Numbered from the stretch's first letter, positions 19,166 through 53,475 are shown. The stretch: 64,000 nucleotides of DNA from Paraphysomonas bandaiensis (GCA_965644295.1 CBFFRP010000126.1:42726-106725); one strand, 5' to 3'. Notes: generated by a model from the sequence alone, not told the origin. A program made the numbers and translations.

Positions 19166-19934
19166 GAACACCTATTTCTTCTTACAGCAAGCAAGCTACA
19201 ATAGCTATACATTCTAGATATTTGGATTTTACATTATGAGGATACGCTATAATTTAACCGTAATACGTACAGTATTAAGAAAAATAACAAGGATTATTAA
19301 ATAGCTATGTCGCCCTTGTTTCTAAATTTTGAGCGCGAGGTGACACTCCAAGACTACTCGACCCTCCAGATTGCGCAAATATATCACTGACAGGTATTTG
19401 CTTAATAAAAAAATCTCTGGAATGCTTTCATCGTTAGTACGAATAGTCATATCACGCTTGATACTAATTGATGCAGCGTGAGCCATATCAACCCCCTCCG
19501 CACTTAGAGATACTCGCAGCTCACCAAATCGTGACTCGGTCTTGTAAACCATCTGGTTTAAAGAGTCATCTTCCAGGCCACTTCCCTAAGAGTTCAACAC
19601 ACTGAACTGTTCCAACTTAAGGTCAATTGATAGATTGATAGTGCGGTAGCATTCATAGCCGTGTAGCTGAGTACAGAAAGAAGAGTTCCCGAAAAGAGAT
19701 CAAGGGCCGGACTATAGCCTCTTTATTGCTCATGGTTAAATATAACTATGCATCATAAAGCTGCTATTGCTGCAATTAATTTTCGTCAGTAACATCAAAT
19801 ATTTACTTCACTTAACAACAATACGAAAACTCGTTGCTATAACGTTACATCATTCTCAATCGGACACAAATAAGACAGCATAGTAATCAGACGTATGATC
19901 ATTAATGACAATCACGTCAATCCGGCATCATACT

Positions 19935-22900: not shown

Positions 22901-23813
22901 AGCTAGAACTGCAATGCGACACATACCCGCATACCACTCTACAAACCCCTTGATTTTTTGGTACACACGCAGCTGGGCTCGGCAAGTGTCTAACTCCTTC
23001 TCAGCATCCTCAAGGACGGATATTACCTGGTCATAATCACGCTCTCTCAAAACAGCACGCTCCAGGTCTCCAACAGTGCGTAAAATACTATCTAATGCTT
23101 CCTCCGACTGTGTGATCTACACATTTCCCTATTTATATTAGGCACCTGATAAGACCATAATTAACCTCCTTTTCAGCCTCACAACGGGACTGGAGAAGGG
23201 AGTGCGTTCCAGCCACATCACACAACGCCGAGAACAGCTGTTTCGGAGAATAATTGATCTACCAGTATGATAGATGAATGCGATCACATTACTTAAATAC
23301 ATACAATCTTCTGTGCAGCTTTCTGGTTAATGCTATAACACGACTTCTGTTTTGCGAAACCAAGTACTTGACAGAGAGTATGCTCAAACCTACATTCCAC
23401 AATTACGCTCAATAAACAACGCCCATCAAACTACTCACATTCCCTTCGATACTCTAGCCCCATTATTGTAGTAAGTACGCTGCCCATCCACAACCATCGA
23501 TCCAACTGTCACATATTTGAGTCTCGATTTAAAAGTTAAGCTTACAACAATCCGTTTATTAGAACTCTCTGTCCCAGCCAGTTCTTTGACACTTTTGGCC
23601 CGCAGATTTTGAGGTACTTCCCCTAGTCCGAACAATATTGCCTCTAGTACATTAGACTTTCCGCTCCCACTACATACGAATGATTTATTCAAAGTATTAT
23701 TAAGAAGATTGTTACTTGGGTCCTGTCAGGACAGTAAAGCCTCGTTCTAACCTCAAATTAAGAGACTTTATGGACTTAAAGTTTTCTATTTTGGCTTCTT
23801 CCAGTAGCCACAT
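19935..23813 (-). CDS. SMC-family ATPase (SMC2-like, strongly diverged), ~9 introns, ~1,100-1,150 aa
   Basis: N-terminal ENFKS, Walker A TGPNGSGKSN (split by an intron), coiled coils, hinge (RIWPLD; CITLEG...VGG), signature LSGGQ, Walker B/D-loop YLLDEVDAALD and H-loop VVCISH. Confidence 0.9.
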
Positions 23814-25919: not shown

Positions 25920-27320
25920 TTAGCCAGATAAGAGTGGAGTTGACTTAACAGAGCAGTCTGACCCTCCAGAGAAGACTTCCAAAGAGCTACCATCAGAGCT
26001 CTTATTAACAACGTTATTCCATTCTATACACAGCGCTTTTCCATCATGTGCTGCTGTCGAGGTGAGCGGTAATGCGGCTCTCGTATCCCAAACGCGAACC
26101 GCGCCATCATAGTCACTAGTGCAGAAACTGTTAGAGTTAACCGGGCTCCACTTTACCTGAGATACCCAGTGCATATCGTCTCCATTGACAAAAGAATTAA
26201 CACACACGGAACTATCGCGACTACGTGAGTCCCAGAGGCGCACGCGCCCATCAGGATGAGATGTCGCAATGAGGTTATTCTCGCGACAGAAGTTCATGGA
26301 CGTAACAACCTTAGACCCAGCTAAGGTGGCAACGCATTCCTGTTTCTCCAAGTCCCACTCTTTCACAGAGTGGTCCCATGAGGAAGTATACAGTCGCCCA
26401 GTCGACGGGCAGCTCTGGAGATGACTAACGGCCTGAGTGTGAGCATGAAGTGAAAAATCGTGTGGAATAACTGTGGCTCCGTCTACACCAGCATCTACTG
26501 ATGTTGGAGTACTCTCTGATGCGTTGATCTTCTTTTTCTTCCTCTTTCCAGTCGTATCCTGGTCGTCGGTCTGAGAAGGTCTGTCAAGTCCTGAAAGACG
26601 GTATCCAAAGATATGTCCTCCCCAGTCACCAGCTACCAACATATCTGTCCCACTATCTGTCCATCGCTCTACACACTCCACGCTACTAATCGCACTCTCG
26701 AAGCGACCAAGGCATGAGAGTGAGCACCCGCCCTTCTTAGGTTGCGAGACCTCCCAGCACCGAACACTCATATCTTTTGATGCCGTCGCAGCCAGTACCC
26801 GCGCAGAAGAATCTGACCAACAGGCCAATGATCGAATAGGGAGTTCGTGGGCCTGTACAGAAACCTTTTCCTCAAGGGTGGATGAGCAAAGAACCCTTAG
26901 CTGCCCATTGTAACAGCCAGCAAAGACACTCACAGGTGAAGCAAGCTGCAATGCACCCACCCATGCTGGGCACTCCGAAGATTTCGCCTCACCTGAAAAG
27001 CTAGTCACAGGTATGTAATCCACTACTAATACTTCCTCGGTTGATATTCTATTCTGCTGAACAAATTTCCGTAACGAAGTCCGGACCAAGGTATTGTTGA
27101 TTATGAAATCAAATGGAACTGGAGTGGAGTTGTCCAGTAAGTGATTAACAACCTCTGATAGCCCATAGCGCCCAAGTTTAGAAGGCACAGCGACAGCCGC
27201 ATCAGCAACTCTATAATCCTCATATTTCGTAACGAATCGAACACGTATCTGCACATATCGCAGTTAAATTAACATATACTAACAAGGACACACCCTCACC
27301 CGCTCGCCGGTATCCTCCAT
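25920..27320 (-). CDS. WDR12: Ribosome biogenesis protein WDR12/Ytm1 (NLE/UBL domain + WD40)
   Basis: Exon 1 MEDTGER (27320-27300) is spliced to IRVRFVTK..., then LSEVVNHLL, PFDFIIN and ISTEEVL. WD repeats include TSSWDHSVKEWD, HPDGRVRLWD and FSGGSD. Confidence 0.92.
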
Positions 27321-32367: not shown

Positions 32368-33925
32368 ATGAGTGGCTGTGTTGATTATGACAATAAAGAT
32401 AAACTTAAGGAGCAGAAGCTGATAGATTTACAATCTCGACTGGAGGATCTCAACCAGGTAAGTATACTGTGTTGTGTTATTGTGTTTACAACAGAGTTTT
32501 TTAGCTGTATGTTCGACTATTTCGTGATTCACAACAGTCCACTTCTATGATCGAAAAATGCCTTAAGGAGCAGGCGGAAATTAATCACCATATTCTGGTT
32601 AGTATGCTATGTATACAGAATATGGTCCCTCACTGTTGCCTGGGATATAGAACACGTTGCTGGATGCTGGAGGTCAACATGATCAGCTGAAGGATGATGA
32701 CACCGGAAGCAGTGGACTTCAATTTAGCTTTGAAGCGATGAAACCACAGTATGTAGAAAATTCTGACGATGATAGTGATACACCACTCAATAAAGAGAAA
32801 AGTGTGGGTGACAAGCCCAAGAGTTACAGCAGATACCGGCACTCCGTCCATACACAAACGAATCTCGCCATTGACCCACAAACGAGCGTGAAGTTGTCTT
32901 TCATCAGTGCTGGTCTTTCATCCTATGGAAGCACCATAGAAGAAAGCTTCGCAGGTCGCACTGCTACAAGAAGTGCGACTTCACAGACGGGATCTCATCG
33001 GCACTTTGTGACGCCATCCACTCGCCACCAGCAACACCAGTTCGACGAGGGAGAGGACGGTGGGGAATTCCACAGAGGTGATCTCCGAAGTGAGGAACGG
33101 GCACCATTATCTCGCCCCCCACCTGTTCCGAGCATATCTAACTCTTCTACTCGTCCGCCAGCACCACCTGTGACCCCTCTGCGGTCAATCCTACGAACCC
33201 CAACCCGAGCCTCTGCGTCAGATTACGAGGATACACCACCTATCAGGAGCGGTCCGTTAAACGCTTTCAGCCCTGCACTCTCCCCGATTCACTCCATTCA
33301 CAGCACCTTAAACTACACAGATGGAACGTTTCAGGCTCATGATGTTTCATGTACTGACCCACATCCTACGCGCCCACAAAGTGAAACGGAGAGGTGGCAA
33401 TCCTCCGCGAGGCCGCAGTACGAGACATCTGTTCCGCGGACTCGGGACTGCGATCAGTCTGAAGCGAGTCTGCAAAGCATTTCTATGTTAGACATGACTG
33501 GGACCACTGCTGCAACACATAGAAGTCTGAGGCCACAAGTTGTTGAACACCAGCAAAATCTCTCGGCGTCCAAGTTTCACAGAACTGGAAGTAGTATTCA
33601 TTTTCAGCCACAGGTAGCTCTCAGCGAAGAGTATAACACTGGAGAGAATAGGATACACCCACTTGAAGCGTATAATGACACTTTTGGTGGAGGTAGCCAC
33701 TACATATATGGTAGTAATACGCCTTTGAGGTCATCTCGCGGTTCTGGGTGGAACTCCCGCAATTCCAAGACTGAAAATTTGGCACCACGACATAGTCAGG
33801 TACTTGGTGATGGTACTGCCACACCACTATCTAAAAAGTCAAGCAAGTTTTGGAGAGATCGATTAGGAAGAAGGGATATGACTTCAATTTTGGGGTCACC
33901 TGTAAGCATGTCTTTGTTTTCTTAG
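32368..33925 (+). CDS. Hypothetical protein: short N-terminal coiled coil + long S/P/T-rich disordered region (3 exons)
   Basis: Exons ~32368-32457, ~32536-32597 and ~32650-33925 with GT-AG introns, including a 422-codon open exon. No recognisable domain. Confidence 0.7.
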
Positions 33926-35747: not shown

Positions 35748-37743
35748 CGAGTGATGACAATTCGCTGTAGAGAACAAAAATATCACCATATTGCCGACAT
35801 AATCTCTACAGCATATATATAGGTTTTTTGAAGCTCATGACATGAACTTTCCAACCATATATGTAACTTTTTAAAATATTCTATAATTTTAAAGATAATC
35901 AATTTTTTAGGGTTTTTTATGAAAACCCCTGATTTTTATACATGCCCATAAAATTACGAAAAAAACAAAAAAATAAATAAAAAGTAACTGAAGTGCTAGT
36001 AAATGCTCTCTACTATATATATGTAACGTATTATTACGTAAAAACTACTTTAAGTAAGTTTGTTTTAAAAAGTCCTGAGCGACCTCATAAAACGGCTAAA
36101 AACCGAAATAGTTTTAGCAGATAACTAGCTATATTTTCAACTAAACAACTAGTTAGAGTGTTGTATAGTACTTCTAAAGTTGTACTAATAGTATCTAGTT
36201 AGTTTAGGTACTATATGTATCATAAGAAGTTGTAAAACAAAATAAATAGCGTGAAAAATTAAAGCTAATTGAACTGACTAATAGTTACTTTTTATTCCAA
36301 GTAGTCGTCATTATCACCTTGCCACACATCAAACTCATCGTCTCCCTTTACAACTAAATCATCAACTTCTACATCAGTATCATCCTCTTCATACTCAGCT
36401 AAGTGTATAACATCAGAATACACACCCTTCTCACGATATCTAAATTCTTGTTCTAACTCACGATATCTAACTCGGGCATGGACCAACTTGTCCATTATTC
36501 TCCCACATTTGACGTTCAGATATTCTACACTCAATGCGCTTATTACATTCCAAACGACGCTTAAGGTAAATGCGACGCTTATTTGTGATATTTGCACTTT
36601 CACGACAAAGGCACAGCCTACGCATTTTTCCATTTTGGTCATTCGATACCTTAGCTGATAATGTTATGGACATCCTTAAACCACTTCTGTATATCCCGCA
36701 ACTCTACTGCTCTACCTTCCTCACTTCTGATACGCCAAACCTTATGTCAAACTTAGAAGATTAATAACCTTGAAGGGATTCATTACCTCTGCTCGTATAG
36801 GACCTGTCCAATCCGAGTTAATGTATTTATGCGCCCCGGATATATTGATTCATAGCTGCTACGAGGAAGTGTAGTACCCTTGTTATCAACCCATTCTTTC
36901 CATAGGCTGTATAGCGTACTAACGCCAATACCTAAATAGTCGCTAGTGCGATTCATGACGTCAGTAATACTTCTCAGTTGATGGCCGTTATAGAAGTCAT
37001 GACACATGCACCAAATTAACCTCAAAGACATGCTTATATCATCCATAGACAGAGTAGTACCACTGCAGCGACTACTGGGACATATAAATTTCAATGGGTC
37101 CGCCTTTGGCTCAGATGGAGTGAAGATAGGGGCAGCATAGCGATGGGGTCTGCTAGGGGTCTTAACGGCAATCTCGCAGGCAATTTCAGGGTTCAAATCA
37201 CATAAATGATTGCTTCGACGCCCCTCCTTATATATTTTGACCTTATTCTTTGATCCTGGGGGTCTACTATGCTTAATTCGAGGTGTAGTGGTCTCATTTA
37301 CCACTATGTCTCCATCAGCCTCAGAGTGATCTTCAAGGGATCTCTTCCGCATAATAATTTTTTCCTCGACATCTAGGAGCCCCTGAGAGTAACGGAGGGT
37401 ATGGTCAGGTAGCCGAGAGCATGCTCTACAATGTTATGTTATTTGGGGTCGTATGGCTTCAAGCTGAATATACAGTGTATTCTGCAGGTGTGAAGATCGT
37501 CCTCGAGTTTATTTGTTGCTCCGAAAACAACATTCTTGATTTTTGAGTGCCCAAATCTCACGACACAGACAGAGTCACCATAAAGTCCAATATAACGAAA
37601 TGTTCAGCATTTAATGGACTATTTCGTGTTAAAATCACAGTATTTCGATTGCTAAAATGAAAAAGTTATGGAATTAAACGTAAAAGACACTTTTTCATGA
37701 TTTTTTGTCCTTTCTCTTCTCTACAGCGAATTGTCATCACTCG
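35748..37743 (-). mobile_element. Tc1/mariner-superfamily DNA transposon, internally deleted
   Basis: 27-bp perfect TIR CGAGTGATGACAATTCGCTGTAGAGAA flanked by TA on both sides. ORF 37352-36783 has an HTH-like RTSDYLGIGVSTLYSLWKEW, and there is an acidic C-terminal fragment. No DDE core is visible. Confidence 0.85.
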
Positions 37744-38107
37744 TAGATAGTATAGCTACGTATACCAATGTGCGTGCTAGCTGGACCCTTGATTCTACCG
37801 CCTGTCGGTTTTCGTTTTGGGAGTGTTCCCTGTGCTTCTTCAGTCCATATTTTTGTGTGTTGAATTTGTCGTTTCGCTTTTCATTCTATTGTGTTTTTTA
37901 TGGTGTGTAATCAAGTGCAAATAGAAACTCCACATTTTTATCACTATCTCTGCATGCATTAAACGAGGTGACGAAACGAACAGGCATTCAACTTGTCTTT
38001 TGCATACATTCATATGTCGCATGCTGATATGGGCATGTGATCTGTCACATATGACTTATCGATGATTGTATTTACTTGACAAGCTAACTGAAACCCCACT
38101 TCGTAAT

Positions 38108-41100
38108 ATGTCATCCGAGCCGGTGGCGATCGTGATCGTCAAGTTTTTACTGACGTTTTACTACCTATTTTCAATCGTGTTTCGGTTGGCGTTTAGATTC
38201 AAAGTCAAATTTAAGTCACGCCATTGGATTATACTTGCTGTAGATTATGCGGTTGATTTATTTTTCGTAGTAGATTATCTCTGGAAATGGAGGCAGAAAT
38301 ATCGGAAAGCTCTTAATATCGCTCCATATTCGCACGCAGATGTTGACGAGACAATTATAACCAGTGATTATATCAGAGGTACAAAGGTCTCGCCAGAGCC
38401 AGCGTCAAGTGACACAATGAAATCTGTTATTACGAATGACAGAAAGGCGTATGTTGCGTTTGAGAATTTGTTGGCTGCGTATGAAAGAAAACAGATTGCT
38501 GATGCCGCATTGAAGGTTCGGCAGCAACGAACACAGCAGTGGCATGCTGTGTGCTTTTGGACGGAAACGGTACTCGATTTTCTTATGATGTTTCCATTTG
38601 AAGTCGTTGCCTATCTGTGCGGCTATAAATTATATTACTTGCTTCGCACTTTCCGCGTTTCTCGAGTTCTGTATTCGAAAAAGTACTGGGCTGATATAGT
38701 CCGTGCATTAGAGATACGTAATGTCATAGTTGGAGCTTCCGGTCACCGTGTTTTGTTTTTAACTTTTTTCATGGTTATATTTGCCCACCTGGGGGCCTGC
38801 TTTTTCTATGCTCTAGCACTGATGCTGATGGAGAAGCAGGATCCTGTTGGTGATAATTGGATGACAGCTGATGGAATAGCAGTATTTGAACACGATACGA
38901 ATACTTATTATTTCACGAAACCACTACGATATCGATATGTTAGGGCGATGTACTGGTCCGTCGTTACGTCGGTAAGTTGCTATTTACACCACGTTGTGCC
39001 GGAAGTCTGATACTCCTGCGTGTAGCAAACCGTTGGCTTCGGTGATGTCGGTCCGCAGTCGGTGTATGAGACTTCGTTCTGTTTGTGCTACTTTTATATG
39101 TCCCACATTCTTGCCCAATTAGCGATCGGTAACCTGATCCTTCTAGTGAATGTTTACGACTCTGCACGAACCAAATATCGCAATCAGATGGAGAAATTGG
39201 AGAATTACGCAAAGTTCCGTTCGCTTCCTCGTGATTTGACGGACAGAATAAAGTCTTTTTACTACCATCAGTGGAAAGTACTTAATGGGCTGGACGAGGA
39301 ACAGGTAGACGTATTCTTTGCTAATGAAAAATTTGACATGAAGTGTTACAGTTCTTGTCTGAGCTGCCACATAACATCCAAACCAAAGTGAAGCAGGCGA
39401 CAGTTCGAGACTACCTCAAAAATATTTCTATTCTCAAAAACCTTCGCATATCAATTTTGAATGCGTTGGCAGAAGATGTGAAGACTATCATGTATTCTCC
39501 ACATGATGTCATAGTAGCAGGTGGAAGCCAGGCCAAGGGCATGTATATCATATCACGGTAGCAGTATATCATTGGATATGACCCGGTTGATGATTTAGTA
39601 TAGGGGTGAAGCGTTTGTGCACTCTATGAGTGTAACGAACACAGACAAAGATCTTGTTATATCCCAGGCTCTGCGTCAGGGTGAATCCTATGGCTCTAAA
39701 GCCCTTATTCAGAAGTTCCAATACTCCTCAACCTTGTCTTCTGGGGCTGGTGTCTGCGAGGTTTTATTTTTAAGCCGGTCGAGATTCAGGCGGACTCTTC
39801 GGCTTCATATGACTGACGAAGAATTCGCTAGAGCCATACCGTCAAATCCGTTAATAGGTGGTGGAGGCAATGATACTGTCGAGAACTCAGATGAGGGAAA
39901 TATGAGAAAAACAAGAAGAGATAATAAACATCACTCTCATATTAGAGCAGGTAATAACATAGGGCATATGCGATGGAGCTTAATCCTGCTATGACCAGGG
40001 TTTATTCAAGTGGAGTTAAAATCCTGGTGGGTAGATCTCTTTAAACCGCAGTCGCTGTTCCGCAATCACTGGGATATTTTTATCTTTGTGGGCATGCTGT
40101 TCTATTCAGTTACACTTCCGTATCTTCTCTCTAACTCACTTGATCCTGAATTCTTTAGTAGAAATATAGGGGTGCTTGTATCGAGTTTTTTGCTTGATGT
40201 TGTTTTTGCTATTAATCTTTTGCTGAGGAGTAATTTCTTTTCGTTCTATCGGCTGAGCGTCCTGTTTTGTAAACCGGAAGATATACTGGAAAATTTTATG
40301 CGAACAGAGAATATATACCTCGAGATACTGAGTGTGCTGCCGTTGGAGATATTGGCCGTAAAATTTGGTGTAGCCTTCATACCAGTACTACGCCTGATGA
40401 AGATATATCACTTGCGCAACTTCGTTGAATATGCTGACCACACTGAACGAGAGATTTCTAGTCGTTTGGGTGTATCCCTTACTTTTGCGCAGCGAAGATT
40501 TATTCGACTCTACGTTGCACTTTTCGAGGTGAGAATGAGCTTAATATATGCGATGTACATGATAGGATACGTTGCAGCTGTGTCACTGGGTGGGATGTCT
40601 GTGGCAACTAACTGCAGACATCAGTACCGAAATGCTTGGCTACGATATTAACTGGAAGATCCAAGACATGGAGTCAGAATTTCTGCATATGCACTATACC
40701 AGACCGAATAGTGCAAGTGCGTATCGCCGGTCAGTATATTGGTAAGTACTTGACAGGTGTAGGTTTTGTATGTTAGTATATGTACCCAGGGCAATTAATG
40801 GGATGGCAACCTCTGGTGTTGCCGATATGCCTAGCACGAATTTATTGGAAATGATATTTTGTTCCTTGACGCTGGTTTGTGGATGCCAAACTATCAATGC
40901 TCTACTGGGTAGTATTGCGTCTCTTATGGGCAATATTAACATGGGAAAGCGGAAGTTTGAAGCCAAAATAGCTATGGTGAAGAAACTCATTAAATTTAAG
41001 CAACTACCTCGCAAGCTTGGGAAGAGGATTATTTACTTCTTTGAGTATAGCTGGTCCAGAACAAGCGGTGCAAATGAGGTGGAAGTATTAGCTGGATTGC

Positions 41101-44100
41101 CACAACCCCTTCGTGAAGATGTTGTCAAATTTGTTGCGGGGTCTGTGCTTGTGAAAATACCGTTTTTCAATGACTGCATTGAACCCATGTTGGAGATGAC
41201 ATTGGGGTTATTGACCCATCGTCTGTTCCTTGAGGGTGATGATTTGATGGTTGCTGGCGAGCATGGCAAGGAAATGTTCGTAATCGAAAGCGGTGCTATT
41301 GTTGTGACATCCCCGGATAAGCAAATCGTATACGCGGTTCTCACCAGTGGTGATTATATTGGCGAAAGTTGTTTACTAAAAGTACGTAAATGTTGTGCTA
41401 TGCATTAATGATGCTGATGTCATGTGACAGGTAGGGAAGCGAACAGCATCTGCACATGCCAGGGACTACTCCGATACATATGTCTTGAGTAAAGAGGATT
41501 TTCAAAAGGTTTTTTATTTTTCCTTCCAATCGCGTATAATGTATGCCTAGGTTTTGGAAGCATTTCCGGGCGAAGGTGAGATTGTTGTTGCAGGAATAGA
41601 AAAGGTACTCGAGCAAAAGCGTCGGATGAACGAAGAAACTGCAAAAAAGAGAATGCAAATGACCCCCTCGCAGATTTTGGAGGAGAAAAAGGAAAGGGAA
41701 GAGAATACATGCAAGATTACAGATTTGAAGTCATCGCGAGAGAGTTCATTTAGTAGAGTGCATTCTTGGAGGAAAGAACTCGAGCCAGGATCGCGGTCTC
41801 GACGATTGTGGGATTCCTTTTTGTTTTTGATTCTATTGTACAATTTGTTTATGGTGCCCTTTCGTATAGCGTTAAATATATGGCCAAGCCTCTATGCCCT
41901 GGACTACTCTTTCGATGTAGTACTTCTTCTGGACTCGTATTTGAACTGGACTGTGTTTCGTCGCAGCATTGGTGGCAAACATATCACTGACGCGGAAGGT
42001 CTGCGCAGCGCCTACTATCGAGATGGGTTTAAGCATGATATTCTGGCTCGTTTCCCTTATGACTTGTTCGCATTAGTTCTCTTTGGCCGTGACATGCATC
42101 TCGTATTGAAAGTAATGAGCTATTTGCGGATACCAAAGATACTGCTGATTTTGAAGGGCATGGAATGGCTGCTACATTTAGAATCGATTTTGGAAGAGTT
42201 AAAGCTAGCATTCGTGCCTATGCGACTTCTTCAAGTATTGATTTTTTATTTCGTTTCCTCGCGGCTGTAACTTGTATGTTTATAGGTTCTTATTGGATGT
42301 TTGATGGTTGGGCACTGGTTAGGCTGTGGTCTATATTTATTTTCGAAGGTATATTTTAGTAAAATTTTACCACAATAACATGGTACAATTAGGCACACCC
42401 TGAAGATTGTGTTCCAGAGCCAGGCGCTAATTATGGGACGGCGTGTGAATTCAGAAATACCTGGGTCGAATTCCAAATATTAAACATGAAGTTACCGGAG
42501 GATGGTGGAACAGAAATATCTCGTTATATTCGCACGATCAACTGGGCCATCCCAACCATGGTTCTTTATGTCGTTGGAGATGTCTACCCGATGAATGTCA
42601 ACGAAACTAGCTACGTATTTGGCGCTATGTTCTTTGGTATATCAATCAACGCCATGATTATTGGCAGCATTATTGCCCTTGTGTCTACTTTGGATGAAGA
42701 CCTCACCAGTATCACTACCAAATCTGATTTCTTGCGTGATCATTTGAGAGATCATGGAATTGCAGATGGGTTAATTCAGAAGGTATATTAACGACGATAA
42801 TGCTGATTGTTTCTCAGTAGTTCTTATCCAGGTGACGGAGCACATGAAATTTTTACTGACGGACAGTGGGCAGATTATATTGAAGGAATCCGCGATATAT
42901 GATGAATTGCCTCATAGTTTGCAGGTAGGCATAGGAGTAATCTTAACACGGAAATATCACTCGTGTGTTCATAGGTTGCATTTTGTGAGCATACGAAGTT
43001 AGCATACTTCAAACAATGTCCTTTTTTCGACTTTTGTTCTGACGAAGTGTTGAGAAATTTGTGCATGGGTATGAAGCAGCAGCTTTTTTATACTGGTGAT
43101 ATGATCATATCATTTGGTGATTTGGGACAAGAAATGTATTTTATTGATCGTGGTACTGTTGAGGTAATGCAACTGATGGTGGATGACCTAGCAATCTAAT
43201 GGAGCGATACGTTTTAATTAGGTTTTAAGTGCTGATGGCAAGACAGTGTTTACCACACTACAGAGCGGAGGATTTTTTGGTGAAACTGGACTTGTCTTCA
43301 GAAGTCGGCGCACTGCAAATATTCGTGCGTCCAGTCTTTGCGTGTGCTATTCGATCACCAAAGACCAGCTTGACGAAGAACTACGAGACTGTGATTTTGA
43401 TGTGCAAGCCACCATAGCGGTTCTTTGTCGGTATTTGATTTAGTGGATTCGCTTTTATCATAACTTTTATGTTTTGTAGGTTACAAGAAACTAATGCGAA
43501 ACGCAACGATGCTGTTATTCGAAATCTTCAAGAAGCGAAAAGACAAGGCTCCAAGCTCGGTAGAATACTGGGACCGGTAAACAAAAAAAGGCTTGATACG
43601 TTATGGGTAAAACTGTGTCATCCGCATGGACGATTTAAAATATTCGTTGATGTGATGGGGATTTTGTTACTCTTGTACTACGCCTTCAGTGTACCTTTCG
43701 AAGCGACGTTTTTATTTGGAGATGCAATTGATGAGTACAGACGGGGAGGGATGATGGCATGGGACTTCACGGTGGACACTCTGTGCTTTGTTGAACTGTT
43801 ATTACGTATTTTTGCTTTTCCGTTCGGGTTTGAGCAACACAAGCAGAATGTCAGGAGTAGTGCTCGACTTTATGTCTATCCCTTCGATATGGCGTGGGAT
43901 ATTGTTGGCAGTATACCTCTTGAGGCATTTGTTCTTATGAAGTCAGTGAATTTTGGAAGTATATTTGCCCTCCGTTTGATTCATTTATTGCGCCTTAAAA
44001 ATATTTTATCTCGGGTGGCCCAGGTTGAGAAACATATGTACAGAAACGGCTTAAATTTGCATAGGATTACTCTTATGGTCATTAAGAGCATCGCAGCGTA

Positions 44101-46297
44101 TCTGCTGGTCAACCACTGGACGGCGTGTATGTTTTTTTGTGTGCACCGATATTTGGAGTATGACTACGATTTGACATGGGTTATTATGGACGGATACGCT
44201 ACATACGACGAAGAAAAGGGTACACACGACATATGTAGCAGGGGAATCCGCGAATGCTACCAACGCACAATGTACTTTGTGGGAACTGTCCTTACGTCTG
44301 TTGGCTACGGTAACTTGATTATCTTTCGTTTATTAAAGTAATATATTGTGTTTTTAGGGGACATCAATCCATTTACAGATTTTGAAATGTTAATGCAAGT
44401 AATCTTAGCAGTGATTGGTGCATGCATGGGGGCCAATATTTGCGGACAAATGAGTGCATTTCTTCAGATAGGCGACCAGTCGGGCGAAATGTCATTCAAA
44501 GAAAAGATGCGCAGTGTCGAGCACTATATTCGCCTACGAGGACTTCGTATGGAGTTAAGGGCATCAATTTTGACAAATTTTCGCACAATGTGGCGGAAAG
44601 AACGTCGTATTGGCGATAGCAACAGTTCATTTTTAAGCTATTTGACGAAGCCGTTGGCACAAGAAGTTGCGTTTGAGTTAAATAGAGATGTCATCATGTT
44701 TATTCCTATGCTTAAAACTCTACGTACATCTTTGCAGCGCCGAATTGCCTTGGGCATGAAGCCCCAGGTGTTGCTGCCTAACACTCCAGTCTACAGCCAT
44801 GGCGACACTGGATACTGTGTCTTTTTTGTTTTATCCGGGCGAGTTGTTGTTGAGCCAACGAAGGACCGGGATTGGCTTGATCCGGTTGGAGTTGCTACAC
44901 TTAAGATTCTGGACCGAAAGCATCAGTTTATAATGGAGTCTCACACAGTCGGGACCCACTTTGGTGAATTCTGCCTCATGTCGAAGCTAGGAATCAGACC
45001 AGATAATGCCACACCAACTGAAATTACTGAGGTATATTACTATGACAAGGAGGATATCTGGGATTTGTTTGTGGGTATGCCTTTCGTTGAACGATATCGA
45101 TTTGTATTGTCGCTATTTACTGAGGTCGGCGGCATCCCTCACACGAAGGACGTCGTACCGACGTCTAATATTGAGAACCAAGTGGGTAGTACATCTATCA
45201 AGAGTTTGTATAAACTTTGCACATGTGTTGCGAATGATGTCCTAGATGTAATCGAGGGAGAAGACAGTGATCGAGAAGGAGAAAATGATGACGATAGTAG
45301 CTTACTCACAGCAGCGATTAAACCAACCGCACGGGTACGGGGGCTATCGATCGTTTCCGACAATTCTGAAGCGTCTCTTGAGGAGCTGACTGGTGTTTCT
45401 CGTTGGACGGAAGCTTTGAAGGCTTATGATCGGTCTAGACAGAGAAGGGCATCAAGCAAATTGGGATTCTTGGGAGCCAGGTCTGCAGCAATGACAGCTG
45501 TGGTATGTGAGGCTGAAATTGAAAAAGATACTCCTCTGGTGGCCCTTGAAAAACGAATCAGAGCATTATTCGCTTATATCGATAAGGATGGCTCGGGGTC
45601 TATTGACAAAAATGAACTTATGCTCTCTCTACTAGATTTGGGCATAGAGAAGTCATGGGCAGATGTCGACAGCATGATTCGATTCGCAGATAAAGACGGA
45701 GATGAGGAAGTAGATCTGGATGAACTGGTTGCAGCTATAATGAGAGAAATCAAAAAGGAGTCTGGATTTGCGGATGTTGAGTTGGACTCTGAAGACTGTT
45801 TGAGTAGTCGTGGATCACCTCGGGAAGAGATTTCTCCTGAAGTTGATTCAAATGACAATCAAATATTCGAAAACGAACCCACTCCTGATAGTAGACCTGA
45901 GGTAGCAGATGTGACCCAGAATTTGTTGAACCCGGTTTCTCAGCGCAGTTTGACTCGTTCTATTCATGATACTGGTGTAGAAGTGAATACAAATGGCGAA
46001 CCAGAGAGTGAAAGCGAAGTTGCCCCCGATGAAAGAAAACCTGAAACGAATGCTGCGGCCCAGAGTGTATCGAGACCGCCCCCGCAATCGAATGTGGATG
46101 ATGCCATTGAGGCTGCCAATCAGGTTGTGTTTGAAAGTAATTCGATTAGAGATAATAAGCACGAATCCGTAAAACATAAGGTTCTTGGAGATAGTGACAA
46201 TGAAGTTAGCGGTCTGGAAGCTGCAGTGGAAATACATATGGAAATGTCGCCACCAGACGATGAAGCTGCTGATGGATCGCACAGTCAAGAGCTATAG
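38108..46297 (+). CDS. Four-repeat (4x 6TM+CNBD) cyclic-nucleotide-gated channel, CNGK-like architecture, with two C-terminal EF-hands; ~15 introns, ~2,500 aa (start codon uncertain)
   Basis: Four S1-S6/pore/C-linker/CNBD units lie in one spliced frame. S5 motifs are AHLGAC, CHWVGC, GHWLGC and NHWTAC. CNBD motifs include IGE..RTASA, FGE..RTANI and FGE..RPDNA. EF loops are DKDGSGSIDKNE and DKDGDEEVDLDE. Confidence 0.9.
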
Positions 46298-46514
46298 GAA
46301 TATATGCACATAAGTAGCGGTTAAGTGTGAATACTTTACGATAAATGTAGCCGTGATACTATAAACTTGTCCATAGAGAATATCTTTATTTTAGTCTAGA
46401 AATATGACTCAGTCGTAGATGCTGGATTTCTATAATTACATCATTATTTCACTTTATTAGATCGATAATGATATTTATACTAAGTAAGTGGTACTGACGT
46501 AGAAGTATGTATTC

Positions 46515-46658
46515 CAGGGCCTGGTAACTATTAATGGCCCATTAGTGGTAGTCCAGTTCCCGGCAATTATAATGACAACATTATTGAAAAATGTCCAGGC
46601 AATTATAATGGACATTAATACCTCAGTAGATAAAACTGCTCATAATAGATAGTGTAGT
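46515..46658. repeat. Transposon-end repeat also present at 53820-53924
   Basis: cctggtaac...ccattagtggtagtccagttcc..gctcataatagatagtgt is shared by both sites. Confidence 0.7.
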
Positions 46659-49045
46659 GACAGTACATGCAAAGTTTGATGAGTCCATTCCAGAGCGTTC
46701 AAAGGAGTATTTCGACGAAATAGATAATCTACTAATCGACACTTCAGAAACACCAGAGAGTATAAATGATTATCAGTACCTCGTGGGCCTCAGACATCTT
46801 GATGGACATCTGTCTTACGTTACCACCAGAGTGATAGAGAGAAGAGGAGTCATTGTTGCATATAGGAAACTAGATACGGAAGAAAATACTACCGAGGAGC
46901 AAACTCCAATTCATCTCAAAGATGTAGTAAAGATGACTCACTCTACCAGCAGGTGTCAGATCGACAAGTTTAATAATTTGCGAAATGAGTTAGATCAGAG
47001 ATTTGTAATGACAGTGACAATGAGCAAAGGACTCCTGGCCGCTCATATCGGGGCGCATCTTCAACAGGTGGTGCAGATCGAAAATCCCAGAACTGAAAAA
47101 CGACCTCGAAAAAAACGGCACATATTTAACGTTGGTGTCCTTGGCGATGTCTCATTGCTTCTTGATTCCTCCAACAGCACAATTAAAGAGCCACAGACGA
47201 TGGCAGAAGCAAAGAAGACTCCACAGAGAACATACTGGATTGAAGCTACCAGGAAGGAAGTGCACAAGCTTGAACGAAGGACATGAAACCGAAACACCGC
47301 AAAATCATAAAATCTAAGTTGGTATTTAAAGTAAAGCGCGATCATCTTGGAAAAATTAAGAAGTTCAAAGTTCGACTTGTGGCGAAAGGGTTTACTCAAG
47401 AACAAGGAGTCGACTATAATGAGACATTCTCCCCAGTAGCTAAAGATGTATCATTTAGGCTTACACTGGCACTGCTCTGCGATACAATCTGCAACTCCGT
47501 CAACTCGATGTAGAAACTGCATTTCCGTATGCTGATCTGGAAGAAGATGTGTATATGTCTCCACCTGCAAGAATATATATTCCACAGGCAGGGATGTTGT
47601 TTGTAGATTTTGAAGAGTCTGTACGGCCTGAAACAAGCACCAAGAAACTGGCATTCGATGCTGAAGGATAGTATCAAGGCGATGGGGTATAAACAATGCA
47701 CACTTGACCCATGTTTATTTGCACTGAAGGGTACTGATGGTAACCTACATATGATACTTGTGTATGTAGATGATATCGTTGTCCTAAGTCCTGACAACCG
47801 TCATATTGAAGAGGTCATCAGTTCTTTCAAGACTCAGTATACGATGCAAGATATGGGTGATCTTAAACACTATTTAGGTCTTACCATTGAGCGTGATGAT
47901 GGCCAGATTAAACTACATCAGTCTGCATAATATGCTAATGATGTTGTGGCCAGATTCAATCACTTGTTGTCAGAAAAGAAGAGACGGTGCAAGGCAACCA
48001 CACCTCTACCACCTGGCCTAAAGTTGCCCAAGGATGCAAAAGAGGAAGAAACTCGAAAACAGCGAGAATACGCTGGTGCATTTCCCTATCAATTTGTTAT
48101 TGGTGCCCTAATGTACTTGGCAGTGCATACTAGACCAGACATGGCATATACAGTAAATCTTCTCTCCCGGTTCACCACAAGACCCACGTACGCTGCATGT
48201 CAAGCTGCTCTGCATACTTTACAGTATTTAGAAAATACAGTTGATCAAGGTATCATCTTCCCTAATTTTACAGATGAAGACCCTCTATGTGTGTACTCTG
48301 ATGCAGATTGGGCCGGAGATCTGGATACATGCAGATCCACTACAGGGTATATTGTCTACCTGTGGGGTGCTCCAATTGCATGGCAGTCCAGACTGCAGCC
48401 AAGAGTGCCTACGTCGACTATGGAAGCTGAATACATGGCTGCATATGCTGCAATTCAGGAGATTGTATGAATACGAGGGGTGATGACAGAGCTCGGAAGT
48501 CGTGGATTTGAGCTCTGTAAGAATGCGTCTCCAACAATCTTGAATATGGACAGCAATAGTGCGATTGATCTAGCTCAGAACCCGGTAAATCATAAACGTT
48601 CCAAAAACGTTCCAAGCATATTCGAATCAAGTATCATTGGATTCGAGAGCAAGTGGGAGACTGTATCGTCAGGCTGAATCATGTGCCAACGGCAGAGATA
48701 ACAGCTGACGTGATGACAAAAGCCTTGTCAGAGAAGTTGCACACTATGGTATCGCACTAAGTAGACTTGCTCATTACAGTATATTCTGATATGTTCATTG
48801 AGTAGGAGTATTGAACTACAACCAACTCCTACGTGCGTACTTGAAGTTTGGTAAAGCCAATCGCTAGTAGTTATCCTGTATTCTATGTAGCAATGAAATA
48901 CAGAATATACATGACTACACTATAGGAGTAGCTATTACAAGTATACAAAGAAACTGAAAATATAGTAGTTGTTAAAGTTACGATTTGTAGAACAGAATGT
49001 TGATGTTGGTGAATGACGTGGTTCCTAATTCACAGTGACACAACA
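46657..49045 (+). mobile_element. 5'-truncated, decayed Ty1/copia element (IN tail-RT-RNase H; probable 3' LTR ~48810-49045)
   Basis: FKVRLVAKGFTQ..GVDYNETFSPV, KSLYGLKQAPRNW, VYVDD, YSDADWAG, STTGY and STMEAEY, with frameshifts and a stop at 47928. A purine tract gagtaggag lies at ~48800. Confidence 0.92.
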
Positions 49046-50861: not shown

Positions 50862-53475
50862 ATGTCGAAAAGTATTCCTTTTTTACATTCACATAAGTTG
50901 GGTGCAGAGTTGGGTAATTACCCCCCCTTCATCATCAGAGAAGCCACAAGAAATATTGACAACAGAAGGGTAATAGTGAAAATCTATTGCAAACTGGGAC
51001 AATCATCAGCGGAGCAAGAGAAAGTACAGACTGAAATGCAGTTTTGGCGCCTGGTAACGCATCCTAGGGTTGTAGAAATATCGGATGTGTTCGACGAAGA
51101 GGGTTTCCTGTATATCGTATTTGATTACCCGGCTGGTGGAGATTTAGCTGCACTTGTCATGGATGCCACGCGAACTTTCACGGAGGGATTTACTCGAAAA
51201 GTTGCATCTGCTGCATTGGATGCTTTGATATTTTTGCATTCAAATGGAATCATACATGGCGGTGTCCTGCCAGCCAATATAATATTTTCGTCTCCTACTG
51301 ATGTCCCAGGGTGGGCAGATTCCTCCAAGCTGACCTTTTTTCGAATTGATGGTTCTCGGATATCATCTATATTCACAGACATACAGGACCTTGCGTATTG
51401 CATAGTGTGTATCATGCGTAAAAAGGCGGGTTTATTGTCAAGAACGTATTTTGACCCTGAAATATTGCAGGTTGGTGATTGTGCTGCGCTATTATTTATT
51501 TAACATTTTACTACCAGGGTAATGATTGGAGTCACCTCACGAATGATTTTGTTGATTTTGTTGACCAGCTTTGGAACTGTGAAGAGAATTATAAGACGGC
51601 CGAAACGTTTCTATCACATCCGTGGCTGGTAGGTGGGAAATCTTATTACGATGGCACGATTGGTAGGAGTTAATTACTTCAATATGCCACTATTAATGAA
51701 GTTTTGTAGCTGATGGCATACCTCCGCCCTTCTTGACGGTTAGTGGCTACGGGAGTCGGAACGTTGTGCAGGGTACTCAGTCGAATGAAGACTTGAATTG
51801 TTACCTGTATATTAAGATGCGTGAAAAGTCATCCATTGGTACTAGGAAGTGGCGTCGCAGATGGGGAGTGGTGGAAGGGTCAGTTCTACTGCTCTACAAA
51901 GATTCAAATGAGGACAAATCCAACAACCAAGACCTGGCACAGGCCATTCACCTCAAAGATAAAGCAGCAGTGGTATTAGCAATGGCTAAACACGACTATA
52001 CATTTGGTCTTCAAGACACAGTTCTGCAGCAAATCGTTTTGTGGATGAGGTTCGACAATGAAACCGATTACTCCAGGTACTGTATACGTGTTCTTTTGTA
52101 AATTTTATTATTCAACTGTCAGGTGGAAACAATTTCTTCTGTCATCTCAGAAAGAACTTTCTGCTGCCAAAACCTACAATGATATGGAGAACCCCGATAA
52201 TGCACTGTCTCCACCTGAACAGAGCTTTGCTTCTACTCTTTTACAATCTCTTCCGTCTGCCCCAGATGCAGGTGTCATGTACGTAGCCTGCTTAAGTATA
52301 ACTCACATCTCTTTCTTGGGTACAGAGTCTCTAGTTCGGGCTGTGGATTTGGCATCTAAAGAATTCACGAGGCAGATTGAAGCACAGGCAGCGTCTTATG
52401 TACGGAAGTCGCAAATGCTTCAGACATTGAAAGGGAATAAGCTGGACAATGCTAACACCAGTCGGGCGTATAATCACTCTCTGTCGCCTTTTCCATCTGA
52501 GCAGAAGACTCGCGTACATCCAGCTATCAAGTGGGACATGCGGGCTCAAGAACTTATGTTGGTCATGTCAACTGGTGAAAATAATTGATAACATATCTTT
52601 ATTTGTAATATTGTGTGCGTTGCTAATGTTCAGGAACGCCTGTCAATATCCCCGTATCTGATGGACAAGAGTGGTTTATAGTTGACGCGACATGGTTTAA
52701 ACATTGGATCTTTTTTGTCTCCAGCAAGCGGAGAGTAGTTCCACCTGGGCCAATAGATAATTTGTGGATGATAAATCCTCTAACTGACCGACCCTATGAG
52801 CATATGAGAGAGGACACAGACGACTCTTCTGGTGATTTCAGGCGTGTGCCTCCACAGGTGCGAATTTCATTCATCTACACTTTATTGTCACAAACAATGC
52901 AGATATGGGAGCTGTTTGAAGTATGGTATGGTGGGGGTCCCGCTATTAGTGTAGTCGGGCCGCCGGTAGAAGATTCACGACGATGGACAGTTCATATTCG
53001 TGAAAAGATATCAGATAATGATGACGGAGAGAGCCTTGTTGACTTAGTCGCAAATTTAGAACACCCAGAGGACGTCATACACAAGGGTGCCAAAAACGTT
53101 GCTGTCAAACTACAAGGCAGAAAACCATCTGTGGCTGAACTCACGTTTCTCTCGAAAACAGGAAACTTTTATGACGGAGAGGGTGACAGAGCAGAGAGAG
53201 CACTTTCTGCTGTTGATTCAGATGAAGAAGCAGAAGAAGATGATGAAGATGATTCGTTCAATGGTAGTGTGCGTATGAGTAATAATGATGACAGTACAAC
53301 GTCCTATGCACCACTTACAGCTGCCCAACTGCAGCTCATTGGTGATGAAGAGAAGTCTTTTAGCGATGTTTCTACTTCATTGGATCCTGATCAGCAGAAC
53401 AAAGATGGAGATATTTCGAACAATGCACCAGCTCAAGCCCAGAAAAAGCGATTAAGTATATTTAATCGTGGTTAA
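50862..53475 (+). CDS. Pseudokinase (CAMK-like fold) + PH domain + unknown C-terminal region, ~7 introns
   Basis: Kinase-fold motifs VIVKI, HPRVVEI, GGDL, FLHSNGIIHGGVLPANII and FLSHPW. PH motif YLYIK...KWRRRWGVVEGSVLLLYKD...WKQFL. Acidic tail. Confidence 0.8.

What the first reader, a model, noticed from the sequence alone, without database searches (positions are those of the whole stretch)
38108..46297. Single-chain four-repeat CNG channel with an asymmetric selectivity filter
Seen: one spliced ORF encodes four 6TM+CNBD repeats. The pore signatures are I QTVGFGD (~39027), II ATSGVAD (~40806), III VLYVVGD (~42560) and IV TSVGYGD (~44294), so two repeats keep a K+-channel signature and two have lost it. 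Known: CNG/HCN channels are usually tetramers of single repeats, and the four-repeat CNGK sperm channels keep GYG-type signatures in all repeats. Inference: concatenation let the repeats specialise, as in Nav/Cav channels, possibly giving a non-selective or Ca2+-permeable pore. I do not know of a characterised channel with this filter.
Basis: partly seen in the sequence, partly recalled or inferred. Interest (0 to 1): 0.8.

Follow-up and report, generated by a model that had tools for sequence, protein, structure and literature searches.

The report
Four-repeat cyclic-nucleotide channel, lopsided pore
This marine stramenopile gene makes one long protein holding four different cyclic-nucleotide-gated channel subunits, two of which have lost the potassium-selective pore motif; it belongs to a widespread protist family that apparently has not been described and that arose separately from the animal sperm channel CNGK.

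Summary
A 16-exon gene (38108-46297, +) encodes a 2485-aa protein with four 6TM + C-linker + CNBD repeats and a C-terminal EF-hand pair. One spliced transcript contig removes all 15 short introns exactly as modelled. A 49%-identical relative is a single intronless ORF. The pore motifs are I TVGFGD, II TSGVAD, III LYVVGD and IV SVGYGD.

The odd filters are not decay:
- Two paralogs in this genome keep the same kind of pattern (I and IV canonical; II SAGTAD/TAGAGD; III LYVVGD/LYTVGD).
- Eight full-length public relatives keep the window's motifs; the nine sequences average 58% pairwise identity. The only change is V/T in III, and P-loop III is the best-conserved P-loop.

The gene belongs to a large stramenopile family (Platysulcus, Cantina, Phytophthora, Aureoumbra, centric diatoms). 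Repeat III lacks GYG in nearly all its members (commonly VVVIGD). Loss in repeat II is confined to this clade and its sister.

Per-repeat trees and an AU test show it is not a CNGK orthologue; the four-repeat form arose independently.

Gating by cNMP at CNBD II (and III), Ca2+ modulation and relaxed K+ selectivity are inferred, not shown. I found no description in the searchable literature. Verdict: new variant of a known kind, interest about 0.7. The scan's notes hold only re-reads of this same stretch, none on other DNA.

The parts
38108..46297 (+). Whole coding region (ATG to stop), 16 exons, 2485 aa. Exons: 38108-38971, 39026-39304, 39352-39557, 39604-39950, 39999-40528, 40578-40741, 40790-41381, 41431-41508, 41551-42234, 42286-42348, 42393-42782, 42832-42924, 42975-43163, 43222-43430, 43480-44309, 44358-46297.
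   Evidence: Model. All 15 joints are seen in one spliced contig of run X1, 13 of them also in X4, and the last also in X5. They are absent from DNA run X18.
38108..39950 (+). Repeat I (S1-S6, C-linker, CNBD I), residues about 1-560.
   Evidence: Pfam Ion_trans on exon 1. Colinear alignment with homologues.
39029..39046 (+). Filter I, TVGFGD (K+-type GFG).
   Evidence: Invariant in the window protein and 8 full-length relatives.
39680..39742 (+). Phosphate-binding cassette of CNBD I. It is degenerate: GE...QYSSTLSS, with the conserved Arg-Thr replaced by Tyr-Ser.
   Evidence: Alignment; the same loss is seen in all clade members.
39999..41508 (+). Repeat II (S1-S6, C-linker, CNBD II), residues about 561-1020.
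   Evidence: Pfam cNMP_binding on exon 7. The closest solved chains are CNGA3, CNGA1, SthK and TAX-4.
40809..40826 (+). Filter II, TSGVAD. The Tyr/Phe is replaced by Val and the second Gly by Ala.
   Evidence: Invariant in the window protein and 8 full-length relatives. Paralogs have SAGTAD and TAGAGD.
41361..41460 (+). Phosphate-binding cassette of CNBD II, canonical (GESCLLKVGKRTASAHA). It spans the intron at 41382-41430.
   Evidence: nearly invariant across the clade and its sister.
41551..43430 (+). Repeat III (linker, S1-S6, C-linker, CNBD III), residues about 1021-1562.
   Evidence: Pfam Ion_trans on exons 9 and 11.
42564..42581 (+). Filter III, LYVVGD. Thr is replaced by Leu and the first Gly of GYG by Val.
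   Evidence: The motif is LYVVGD or LYTVGD in all clade members and both paralogs. The 21-aa P-loop III is 91% identical across sequences that average 58%.
43279..43329 (+). Phosphate-binding cassette of CNBD III, canonical (GETGLVFRSRRTANIRA).
   Evidence: Canonical in the window's subclade; degenerate, with an insertion, in the P0003 subclade.
43480..45100 (+). Repeat IV (S1-S6, C-linker, CNBD IV), residues about 1563-2090.
   Evidence: Pfam cNMP_binding on exon 16, residues 138-237.
44297..44362 (+). Filter IV, SVGYGD (K+-type GYG), split by the intron at 44310-44357 after GYG.
   Evidence: The splice is seen in runs X1, X4 and X5.
44963..45022 (+). Phosphate-binding cassette of CNBD IV, atypical (GEFCLMSKLGIRPDNATPTE). 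The Arg is kept, but the Thr/Ser-Ala that follows is lost.
45548..45739 (+). C-terminal EF-hand pair, with canonical 12-residue loops DKDGSGSIDKNE (45581-45616) and DKDGDEEVDLDE (45689-45724).
   Evidence: Pfam EF-hand_7, EF-hand_1 and EF-hand_6. Loop coordinates. Conserved in P0161-P0164 and P0005; absent from the P0003 subclade.

Best explanation
Shown:
- The locus is one expressed gene for a pseudo-tetrameric channel. Four non-identical 6TM + C-linker + CNBD modules, only 21-23% identical to each other, sit on one 2485-aa chain, followed by a pair of canonical EF-hands.
- It belongs to a stramenopile-wide family of four-repeat CNBD channels whose repeats are positionally orthologous (r1 with r1, and so on). 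This family arose independently of the animal and choanoflagellate CNGK.
- In this family the third P-loop has lost the K+ signature. In this gene's clade and its sister the second has lost it too. The new sequences (TSGVAD, LYVVGD) are under strong purifying selection.

Inferred mechanism:
- The four P-loops line one central pore in the fixed order I-II-III-IV. Two adjacent K+-type strands (IV and I) therefore face two adjacent non-K+ strands (II and III).
- Strand III has Val at the first-Gly position and Leu at the Thr position, so it cannot take the canonical filter conformation.
- The four-fold carbonyl cage is therefore incomplete. The pore is expected to be a cation pore with relaxed K+ selectivity, HCN/NaK/CNG-like, rather than a strict K+ pore.
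- Opening is most likely driven by cyclic-nucleotide binding to the intact and near-invariant CNBD II, with CNBD III contributing. CNBD I is ligand-dead, and CNBD IV is atypical.
- The S4 segments carry only 2-3 regularly spaced basic residues, which suggests weak voltage dependence.
- The EF-hand pair gives Ca2+-dependent modulation.
For: One gene, one transcript:
- One spliced 7679-nt contig covers all 15 joints, while the DNA run is unspliced.
- The homologue P0163, 49% identical, is called as one intronless 2551-aa ORF on a 226-kb contig.

Architecture:
- Pfam finds Ion_trans, cNMP_binding and EF-hand on the exons.
- The nearest solved chains are CNGA1/3, SthK, TAX-4 and HCN.
- The repeats are 21-23% identical to each other.

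Conservation of the odd filters:
- Paralogs at C133 and C217 have TVGFGD/SAGTAD/LYVVGD/SVGYGD and TVGYGD/TAGAGD/LYTVGD/SVGYGD.
- P0003, P0157-P0159 and P0161-P0164 (full length), plus the partial P0160 and P0165 over the repeats they hold, have TVGFGD/TSGVAD/LY[VT]VGD/SVGYGD at 45-52% identity to the model.
- Filter identity is 100%, 100%, 91% and 100% for I-IV. P-loop identity is 79-91%, against 58% for the whole protein.

Family:
- The third filter is VVVIGD or VVCFGD in Platysulcus, Aureoumbra, Thalassiosira, Cyclotella and Proboscia, and VTVIGD in Cantina. It is LVGSRE in Phytophthora.

Independent origin:
- In the careful tree all 16 CNGK repeats form one clade (100/100). They group with two-repeat and single-repeat channels (100/98). 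The stramenopile repeats group by position: r1 98/98, r2 99/99, r3 88/77.
- The AU test rejects a joint r3 clade (p 4.5e-39).

CNBD and EF-hand state: alignment; loop sequences.
Against: - No functional datum exists. Selectivity cannot be read from sequence: HCN keeps GYG yet is poorly selective, and Pozdnyakov et al. 2020 make the same caveat.
- Three of the four strands keep a hydroxyl at the Thr position, and three of the four keep each Gly. Some K+ sites could survive, so the channel may still prefer K+.
- A canonical CNBD does not prove cNMP gating. Zebrafish CNGK has four canonical CNBDs but is gated by pH (PMC4749565).
That the transcript contig covers it is inferred from the contig's length.
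- Run X1 is labelled RNA only as a guess. Its spliced state is what shows it derives from RNA.
- The AU group was named after the tree had been seen.
Confidence: 0.6

Rival explanations
1. It is still an essentially K+-selective, cNMP-gated hyperpolarising channel and so works like CNGK. The two canonical strands, plus the retained Thr/Ser-x-Gly of strand II and the Gly-Asp of strand III, are enough to build K+ sites.
For: Filters I and IV are canonical. At each filter position three of the four strands keep the canonical Thr/Ser or Gly. CNGK provides a functional precedent for a four-repeat CNBD K+ channel.
Against: Val at the first-Gly position (III) and Ala at the second-Gly position (II) sit where K+ filters need glycine-type backbone angles; this rests on established K+-channel structural knowledge, not on a test here. 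Related all-canonical four-repeat channels exist, so the substitutions are specific to this lineage and are conserved.
Confidence: 0.2
2. It is a Ca2+-permeable or Ca2+-selective pore. Cyclic nucleotides would then trigger Ca2+ entry directly, with EF-hand feedback.
For: The EF-hand pair on the same chain suggests coupling to Ca2+. Animal CNG channels, the closest solved relatives by sequence, pass Ca2+. The sister clade has Glu inside filter III, as MEVIDD and SESIVD.
Against: Apart from the conserved Asp that ends each filter motif, this clade has no added acidic residue in or just after any filter: the post-filter residues are VGPQS, MPSTN, VYPMN and INPFT. This is unlike the TIGE ring of CNG or the EEEE ring of Cav.
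Confidence: 0.12
3. The central pore does not conduct. The protein would work as a sensor or scaffold, or conduct through another path, as in the HCN-like proton channel HCNL1, whose pore domain is non-conducting.
For: Two of the four filter strands are non-canonical, with hydrophobic residues (LYVV; VVVI in relatives). HCNL1 is a precedent, known to me only from the abstract listed (PMC7306766).
Against: The pore helices and filters are the most conserved parts of the protein, including the canonical I and IV strands. This fits a working pore. The S4 segments are charge-poor, which argues against a voltage-sensor conduction path.
Confidence: 0.06
4. It is an artefact: a mis-assembly, a read-through of four neighbouring single-repeat genes, or a decaying pseudogene.
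For: None found. The tool itself warns that a contig spanning two genes does not prove one transcript.
Against: After splicing there is an uninterrupted 2485-codon frame. Splicing is identical in independent runs. There are two colinear paralogs. More than 10 colinear homologues exist, including an intronless single ORF. Purifying selection acts on all four P-loops.
Confidence: 0.02

Closest known systems
CNGK (four-repeat cyclic-nucleotide-gated K+ channel of animal sperm and choanoflagellates; Bonigk 2009, Fechner 2015)
   Same: Both have four 6TM + C-linker + CNBD repeats on one chain. Both have charge-poor S4 segments. In both the CNBDs are unequal: ApCNGK is opened by one cGMP at CNBD 3, and here CNBD II is the best-conserved intact site.
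   Different: CNGK has GYG/GFG in all four P-loops, and its repeats are described as unspecialised (PMC4749565; PMC6259924). Here II and III are non-canonical. CNGK repeats form their own clade, so the four-repeat state arose separately. CNGK has no C-terminal EF-hand pair in the member seen here; I did not scan it with Pfam.
[quoted passage not shown] 2020, PMC7576140)
   Same: They are tandem CNBD channels of the SAR supergroup whose repeats have co-evolved and specialised. The window's genome also carries two-repeat genes.
   Different: They have two repeats, not four, with TVGYG-like filters in both. In the tree, the two-repeat sequences sampled here, one of which is from a bicosoecid, group with CNGK and single-repeat channels, not with this family. 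That paper reported no tandem CNBD channels in diatoms or labyrinthulomycetes, and no four-repeat ones outside Holozoa.
Heteromeric animal CNG channels (CNGA/CNGB, 3:1)
   Same: They are the closest solved relatives by sequence. Unlike subunits give them an asymmetric pore, and they are ligand-gated non-selective cation channels modulated by Ca2+.
   Different: Their asymmetry comes from assembling separate subunits. Their filter is TIGE-type. Ca2+ regulation works through calmodulin, not built-in EF-hands.
Four-domain Nav/Cav/NALCN channels
   Same: They are single-chain 4x6TM channels in which concatenation fixed the domain order and allowed a different filter residue in each domain.
   Different: They belong to a different superfamily branch, have no C-linker or CNBD, and have DEKA/EEEE-type P-loops. 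This is an analogy of principle, not membership.

Membership tests
CNBD-channel superfamily (HCN/CNG/KCNH/CNGK and protist kin) | 6TM voltage-gated-like ion transport domain | tested here: met
   Pfam Ion_trans on exons 1, 9 and 11. All four repeats match the P-loop/S6 HMM.
CNBD-channel superfamily (HCN/CNG/KCNH/CNGK and protist kin) | C-linker plus cyclic-nucleotide-binding domain directly after S6 | tested here: met
   Pfam cNMP_binding on exons 7 and 16. Exon 7 aligns from S6 through the C-linker into the CNBD of CNGA1/3, SthK, TAX-4 and HCN. PBC motifs are located in all four repeats.
CNBD-channel superfamily (HCN/CNG/KCNH/CNGK and protist kin) | Consensus filter TVGY/FG (Pozdnyakov 2020) | tested here: inconclusive
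   Met in repeats I (TVGFG) and IV (SVGYG). Not met in II (TSGVA) or III (LYVVG). Animal CNG channels also deviate, so this feature does not exclude membership.
CNBD-channel superfamily (HCN/CNG/KCNH/CNGK and protist kin) | Short S4-S5 linker and non-domain-swapped fold | not tested
   No structure was predicted. The full chain (2485 aa) exceeds the 1200-aa limit, and the spliced protein has no reference.
CNGK | Four 6TM-CNBD repeats in one polypeptide | tested here: met
CNGK | GYG or GFG K+ signature in every repeat | tested here: not met
   Repeats II and III lack it. CNGK members seen here have [ST][TV]GYGD in all four repeats. Literature.
CNGK | Repeats fall inside the CNGK clade, repeat by repeat | tested here: not met
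   The CNGK clade (100/100) excludes all repeats of this family. The AU test gives p 4.5e-39 against a joint r3 clade.
CNGK | K+-selective, cGMP-activated current | not testable with these tools
   Needs electrophysiology.
Stramenopile four-repeat CNBD channel family (defined here, not named in the literature I could search) | Positional orthology of repeats r1-r4 with members from Platysulcus, Phytophthora and unnamed relatives | tested here: met
   r1 98/98, r2 99/99 and r3 88/77; r4 falls in two supported groups. The quick tree of 151 repeats gives the same pattern.
Stramenopile four-repeat CNBD channel family (defined here, not named in the literature I could search) | Non-canonical third P-loop ending in GD | tested here: met
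   LYVVGD here. Relatives have VVVIGD, VVCFGD or LVVYGD, and the oomycete branch has LVGSRE.
EF-hand Ca2+-binding pair | Two 12-residue loops with Asp at positions 1 and 3, Ser/Asp at 5 and Glu at 12 | tested here: met
   DKDGSGSIDKNE and DKDGDEEVDLDE. Pfam EF-hand_7 E 2.6e-9 and EF-hand_1 E 8.5e-10. Ca2+ binding itself was not tested.
Four-domain Nav/Cav/NALCN | DEKA/EEEE-type P-loops, no CNBD, characteristic turrets and III-IV linker | tested here: not met
   The P-loops are K+-channel-like and each repeat carries a CNBD. This is an analogy only.

The most novel reading that the evidence does not exclude
Stramenopiles, including diatoms and oomycete pathogens, independently invented a single-chain four-domain channel from CNBD-channel subunits and then specialised its domains. 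One P-loop (III) was rebuilt early, and a second (II) in this clade. The ligand sites are unequal, and a Ca2+ sensor is built in. This would be a second natural case of the Nav/Cav-type route from symmetric tetramer to asymmetric pore. It would give a selectivity filter made of two K+-type and two non-K+-type strands, with a permeation phenotype not seen in any characterised channel.
Probability: 0.45. Interest if true: 0.85.

Novelty: new variant of a known kind. Interest (0 to 1): 0.7.

Why it matters
Pseudo-tetrameric channels are a textbook case of how gene fusion frees subunits to diverge. [quoted passage not shown]

This family gives an independent, ancient and widespread counter-example, with clear and conserved pore asymmetry. 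It also comes in graded forms: all-canonical relatives, relatives with only III changed, and relatives with II and III changed. That series makes it possible to test how many canonical strands a K+ filter needs.

The family occurs in ecologically dominant diatoms and in Phytophthora, where such host-absent channels have been proposed as control targets (PMC7576140). It may link cyclic-nucleotide and Ca2+ signalling in flagellate cells.

Tried and rejected
- Introns. A 37-nt alternative for the intron at 40529 and several alternative splice choices were settled by the read joints.
- Whole-protein searches. The spliced protein has no reference, so none was possible. I searched by exon and then used homologue ids.
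- Window's own protein. The word search with P0003 did not return it.
- Naming the organism failed. A WDR12/Ytm1-like neighbour is 99% identical to an unnamed MMETSP transcript, and the next hit is only 56%. I can say only that it is a marine, isolated stramenopile lineage.
- Flanking ORFs gave no cyclase, phosphodiesterase or other linked function.
- Literature. Searches for the motif strings and for four-repeat CNBD channels in stramenopiles, oomycetes and diatoms found no description. This covers only the open-access library.
- Modelling. Complex prediction and structure prediction were not used. The full chain exceeds the size limit, the tools return no filter geometry, and no binding claim is made.
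- Operators' rules. Read laying was given 5901 letters, within the stated limit.


Full report
**1. What is in the sequence**

Three-frame translation of 37900-46500 shows a chain of open segments on the + strand carrying channel and CNBD motifs. I joined them through GT-AG introns, checking each junction on the DNA. The result is a 16-exon model:
- The ATG is at 38108, directly after an in-frame stop.
- The stop codon ends at 46297.
- There are 15 introns of 42-58 nt.
- The CDS is 7458 nt, giving 2485 aa with no internal stop.

The four P-loops align to each other without gaps, from the pore-helix W/F to a conserved Glu 20 residues on. The filter six-mers are therefore unambiguous:

| Repeat | Filter | Coordinates |
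|---|---|---|
| I | TVGFGD | 39029-39046 |
| II | TSGVAD | 40809-40826 |
| III | LYVVGD | 42564-42581 |
| IV | SVGYGD | 44297-44362, split by an intron after GYG |

Pfam on exon translations finds Ion_trans, cNMP_binding and a C-terminal EF-hand pair. The repeats are only 21-23% identical to each other.

**2. One gene, one transcript**

Twenty public runs hold the stretch or part of it, including polyA marine metatranscriptomes.
- Run X1 has one 7679-nt contig in which all 15 introns are removed exactly as modelled. This settles the ambiguous 49-nt intron at 40529-40577.
- Run X4 shows 13 of the joints.
- PolyA run X5 shows the last joint.
- DNA run X18 carries the unspliced locus in one piece.

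By its length and register, the X1 contig should run from about 37961 to about 46372, that is, the whole CDS with short UTRs. X1 is labelled RNA only as a guess; its fully spliced state is what shows it derives from RNA.

Independent support comes from the homologue P0163. It is 49% identical and colinear over 2538 aligned positions, and it is called as a single intronless 2551-aa ORF on a 226-kb contig. A read-through, mis-assembly or pseudogene is therefore excluded for practical purposes.

**3. The odd filters are conserved, not decayed**

The genome (62.5 Mb, 669 contigs) holds two colinear paralogs:
- C133: TVGFGD/SAGTAD/LYVVGD/SVGYGD.
- C217: TVGYGD/TAGAGD/LYTVGD/SVGYGD.

An exhaustive profile-free search with exon 7 found 5706 relatives. 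Many were proteins of 2000-3000 aa with four matched stretches. I read the filter of every repeat with a P-loop HMM.
- Eight full-length proteins (P0003, P0157-P0159, P0161-P0164) are 45-52% identical to the model and have TVGFGD/TSGVAD/LY[VT]VGD/SVGYGD. Two partial ones (P0160, P0165) have the same motifs over the repeats they hold.
- Across the window protein and those eight, mean pairwise identity is 58% overall. It is 79-91% in the 21-residue P-loops and 100%, 100%, 91% and 100% in filters I-IV.
- The non-canonical P-loop III is the most conserved of all.

**4. The wider family**

- The sister clade (P0005, P0006/P0151) has II SIGF[YP]D and III MEVIDD or SESIVD.
- A large group has I T[VT]G[FL]GD, II TVGYGD, III VVVIGD or VVCFGD, and IV [ST]VGYGD.
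- Named members of that group are Platysulcus tardus, Cantina marsupialis (III VTVIGD), Aureoumbra lagunensis and the centric diatoms Thalassiosira profunda, T. exigua, Thalassiosira sp., Cyclotella cryptica and Proboscia.
- A Phytophthora branch (P. nicotianae PPTG_06812) has LLGYDD/AVGYGD/LVGSRE/TLFYGD.
- All named entries are annotated only as hypothetical or "cyclic nucleotide-binding domain-containing" proteins.

**5. Not a CNGK orthologue**

I cut 22 proteins into 73 repeats and built a careful ML tree (LG+C20+F+G4).
- All 16 repeats of animal-type CNGK form one clade (100/100). These carry STGYGD-type filters, and the group includes the crinoid Anneissia.
- That clade joins two-repeat and single-repeat channels (100/98).
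- The stramenopile repeats group by position: r1 98/98, r2 99/99, r3 88/77, and r4 in two supported groups.
- A quick tree of 151 repeats agrees.
- Forcing CNGK r3 and stramenopile r3 together costs 138.8 log-likelihood units (AU p 4.5e-39). The group was named after the tree had been seen.

The four-repeat form therefore arose at least twice. Within this family a non-canonical third filter is found in nearly every member examined, and probably goes back to the family's origin. The second filter changed only in the window's clade and its sister.

**6. Ligand and Ca2+ sites**

| Site | State |
|---|---|
| CNBD I | Lacks the phosphate-binding Arg-Thr (Tyr-Ser instead) in every clade member |
| CNBD II | Canonical (GESCLLKV..RTASAHA) and almost invariant |
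| CNBD III | Canonical in the window's subclade, broken by an insertion in the P0003 subclade |
| CNBD IV | Keeps the Arg but not the following Thr/Ser-Ala |

- Both EF-hand loops are canonical. They are conserved in P0161-P0164 and P0005 and absent from the P0003 subclade.
- The S4 segments have only 2-3 regularly spaced basic residues.
- This agrees with, and extends, the scan's other note on this stretch (s1-440959).

**7. How it most likely works**

Shown:
- One chain with a fixed order of four unlike pore modules.
- Two K+-type filter strands and two non-K+-type strands, all conserved.
- One clearly intact CNBD (II), one probably intact (III), one dead (I) and one atypical (IV).
- Two canonical EF-hands.

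Inferred:
- In a four-repeat channel the modules sit I-II-III-IV around the pore. The canonical strands IV and I are therefore neighbours, and they face II and III.
- K+ filters need glycine-type backbone angles at both Gly positions. Strand III has Val at the first, plus Leu for the site-4 Thr. Strand II has Ala at the second. This is established K+-channel knowledge, not tested here.
- I therefore expect an incomplete carbonyl cage and relaxed K+ selectivity, as in HCN, NaK or CNG pores. Gating would be by cNMP at CNBD II (with III), and activity would be modulated by Ca2+ through the EF-hands.
- Apart from the Asp that ends each filter motif, this clade has no added acidic residue in the filter or at the outer mouth.

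Selectivity cannot be read from sequence alone, as Pozdnyakov et al. also note. CNBDs can be present without cNMP gating, as in zebrafish CNGK.

**8. Comparison with what is known**

- Fechner et al. 2015 state that CNGK pores carry GYG or GFG and that CNGK occurs in animals and a choanoflagellate.
- Fux et al. 2018 stress that CNGK repeats show no specialisation and that only the Nav/Cav/NALCN lineage became asymmetric.
- Pozdnyakov et al. 2020 found four-repeat CNBD channels only in Holozoa. In SAR they found two-repeat tandems only in oomycetes and dinoflagellates, and none in diatoms or labyrinthulomycetes.
- Searches for the motif strings and for four-repeat CNBD channels in stramenopiles found nothing further.

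Within the open-access library, therefore, this family and its conserved pore asymmetry are undescribed, although the sequences sit in public databases. No solved structure of any four-repeat CNBD channel appeared among the sequence matches.

**9. Verdict**

This is a real, expressed, single-chain four-repeat CNBD channel with a conserved asymmetric filter. However, it is a member of a broad stramenopile family that is independent of CNGK, not a peculiar CNGK, and its ion selectivity is unknown. I rate it a new variant of a known kind, with interest about 0.7. The scan's notebook lists only this same stretch (s1-440797, s1-440959), and not other DNA.

Noticed in passing
window 10586-12898 (+): A 770-aa ORF with Slo/BK-type RCK domains (Slo-like_RCK, BK_channel_a, Slowpoke_C). 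This is a Ca2+-activated K+ channel-like gene 25 kb upstream of the CNBD channel.
   Followed up: no
window 25920-27254 (-): An NLE + WD40 ribosome-biogenesis protein (WDR12/Ytm1-like). It is 99% identical to an unnamed MMETSP transcript, and the next best hit is only 56%. The organism is therefore a cultured but phylogenetically isolated marine stramenopile.
   Followed up: partly
G000:C133 about 209700-218300 (-) and G000:C217 about 195400-203200 (-); loci L011+L016 and L012+L017: Two full-length colinear paralogs of the window gene. Exon-7 identity is 70% and 53%. Their filters are TVGFGD/SAGTAD/LYVVGD/SVGYGD and TVGYGD/TAGAGD/LYTVGD/SVGYGD, and both keep the EF-hand region.
   Followed up: partly
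G000:C146 about 88220-92126 (+) (L013) and G000:C386 about 19266-23436 (-) (L014): Intronless ORFs of 1302 and 1390 aa encode two-repeat tandem CNBD channels with canonical filters SIGYGD and TVGYGD. This is the class Pozdnyakov et al. described from oomycetes and dinoflagellates.
   Followed up: partly
G000:C146:152000-161999 (-) (L015): Three more ORFs, each with a canonical P-loop (TIGFGD, TVGYGD, TVGYGN) and CNBD matches. This is probably another multi-repeat CNBD channel gene.
   Followed up: no
proteins P0167, P0056, P0089, P0106, P0114, P0141: An oomycete branch of the family (Phytophthora nicotianae PPTG_06812, 2744 aa) has asymmetric filters of another kind: LLGYDD/AVGYGD/LVGSRE/TLFYGD. 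It is annotated only as a hypothetical protein.
   Followed up: partly
proteins P0140 and P0082: These are multi-repeat proteins with plant-CNGC-like GQN filters. P0140 (2207 aa) has [SA]LGQ[NT]L in all four P-loops. P0082 (2285 aa) has three GQ[NS] P-loops detected.
   Followed up: no
proteins P0313, P0316, P0318, P0319, P0331: All named diatom members of the VVVIGD group are centric diatoms (Proboscia, Thalassiosira spp., Cyclotella), the diatoms that still make flagellate sperm. No pennate diatom appeared in the list. This may reflect sampling.
   Followed up: no
window 41682: The window has G where runs X1, X4 and X18 all read A. The change is synonymous (GAG to GAA, Glu1064).
   Followed up: yes
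window 50862-51503 (+): An ORF fragment with a protein kinase domain. Other flanking ORFs (32657-33925, 36783-37352, 46657-47286, 47946-48470, 52762-53475) have no Pfam match.
   Followed up: no
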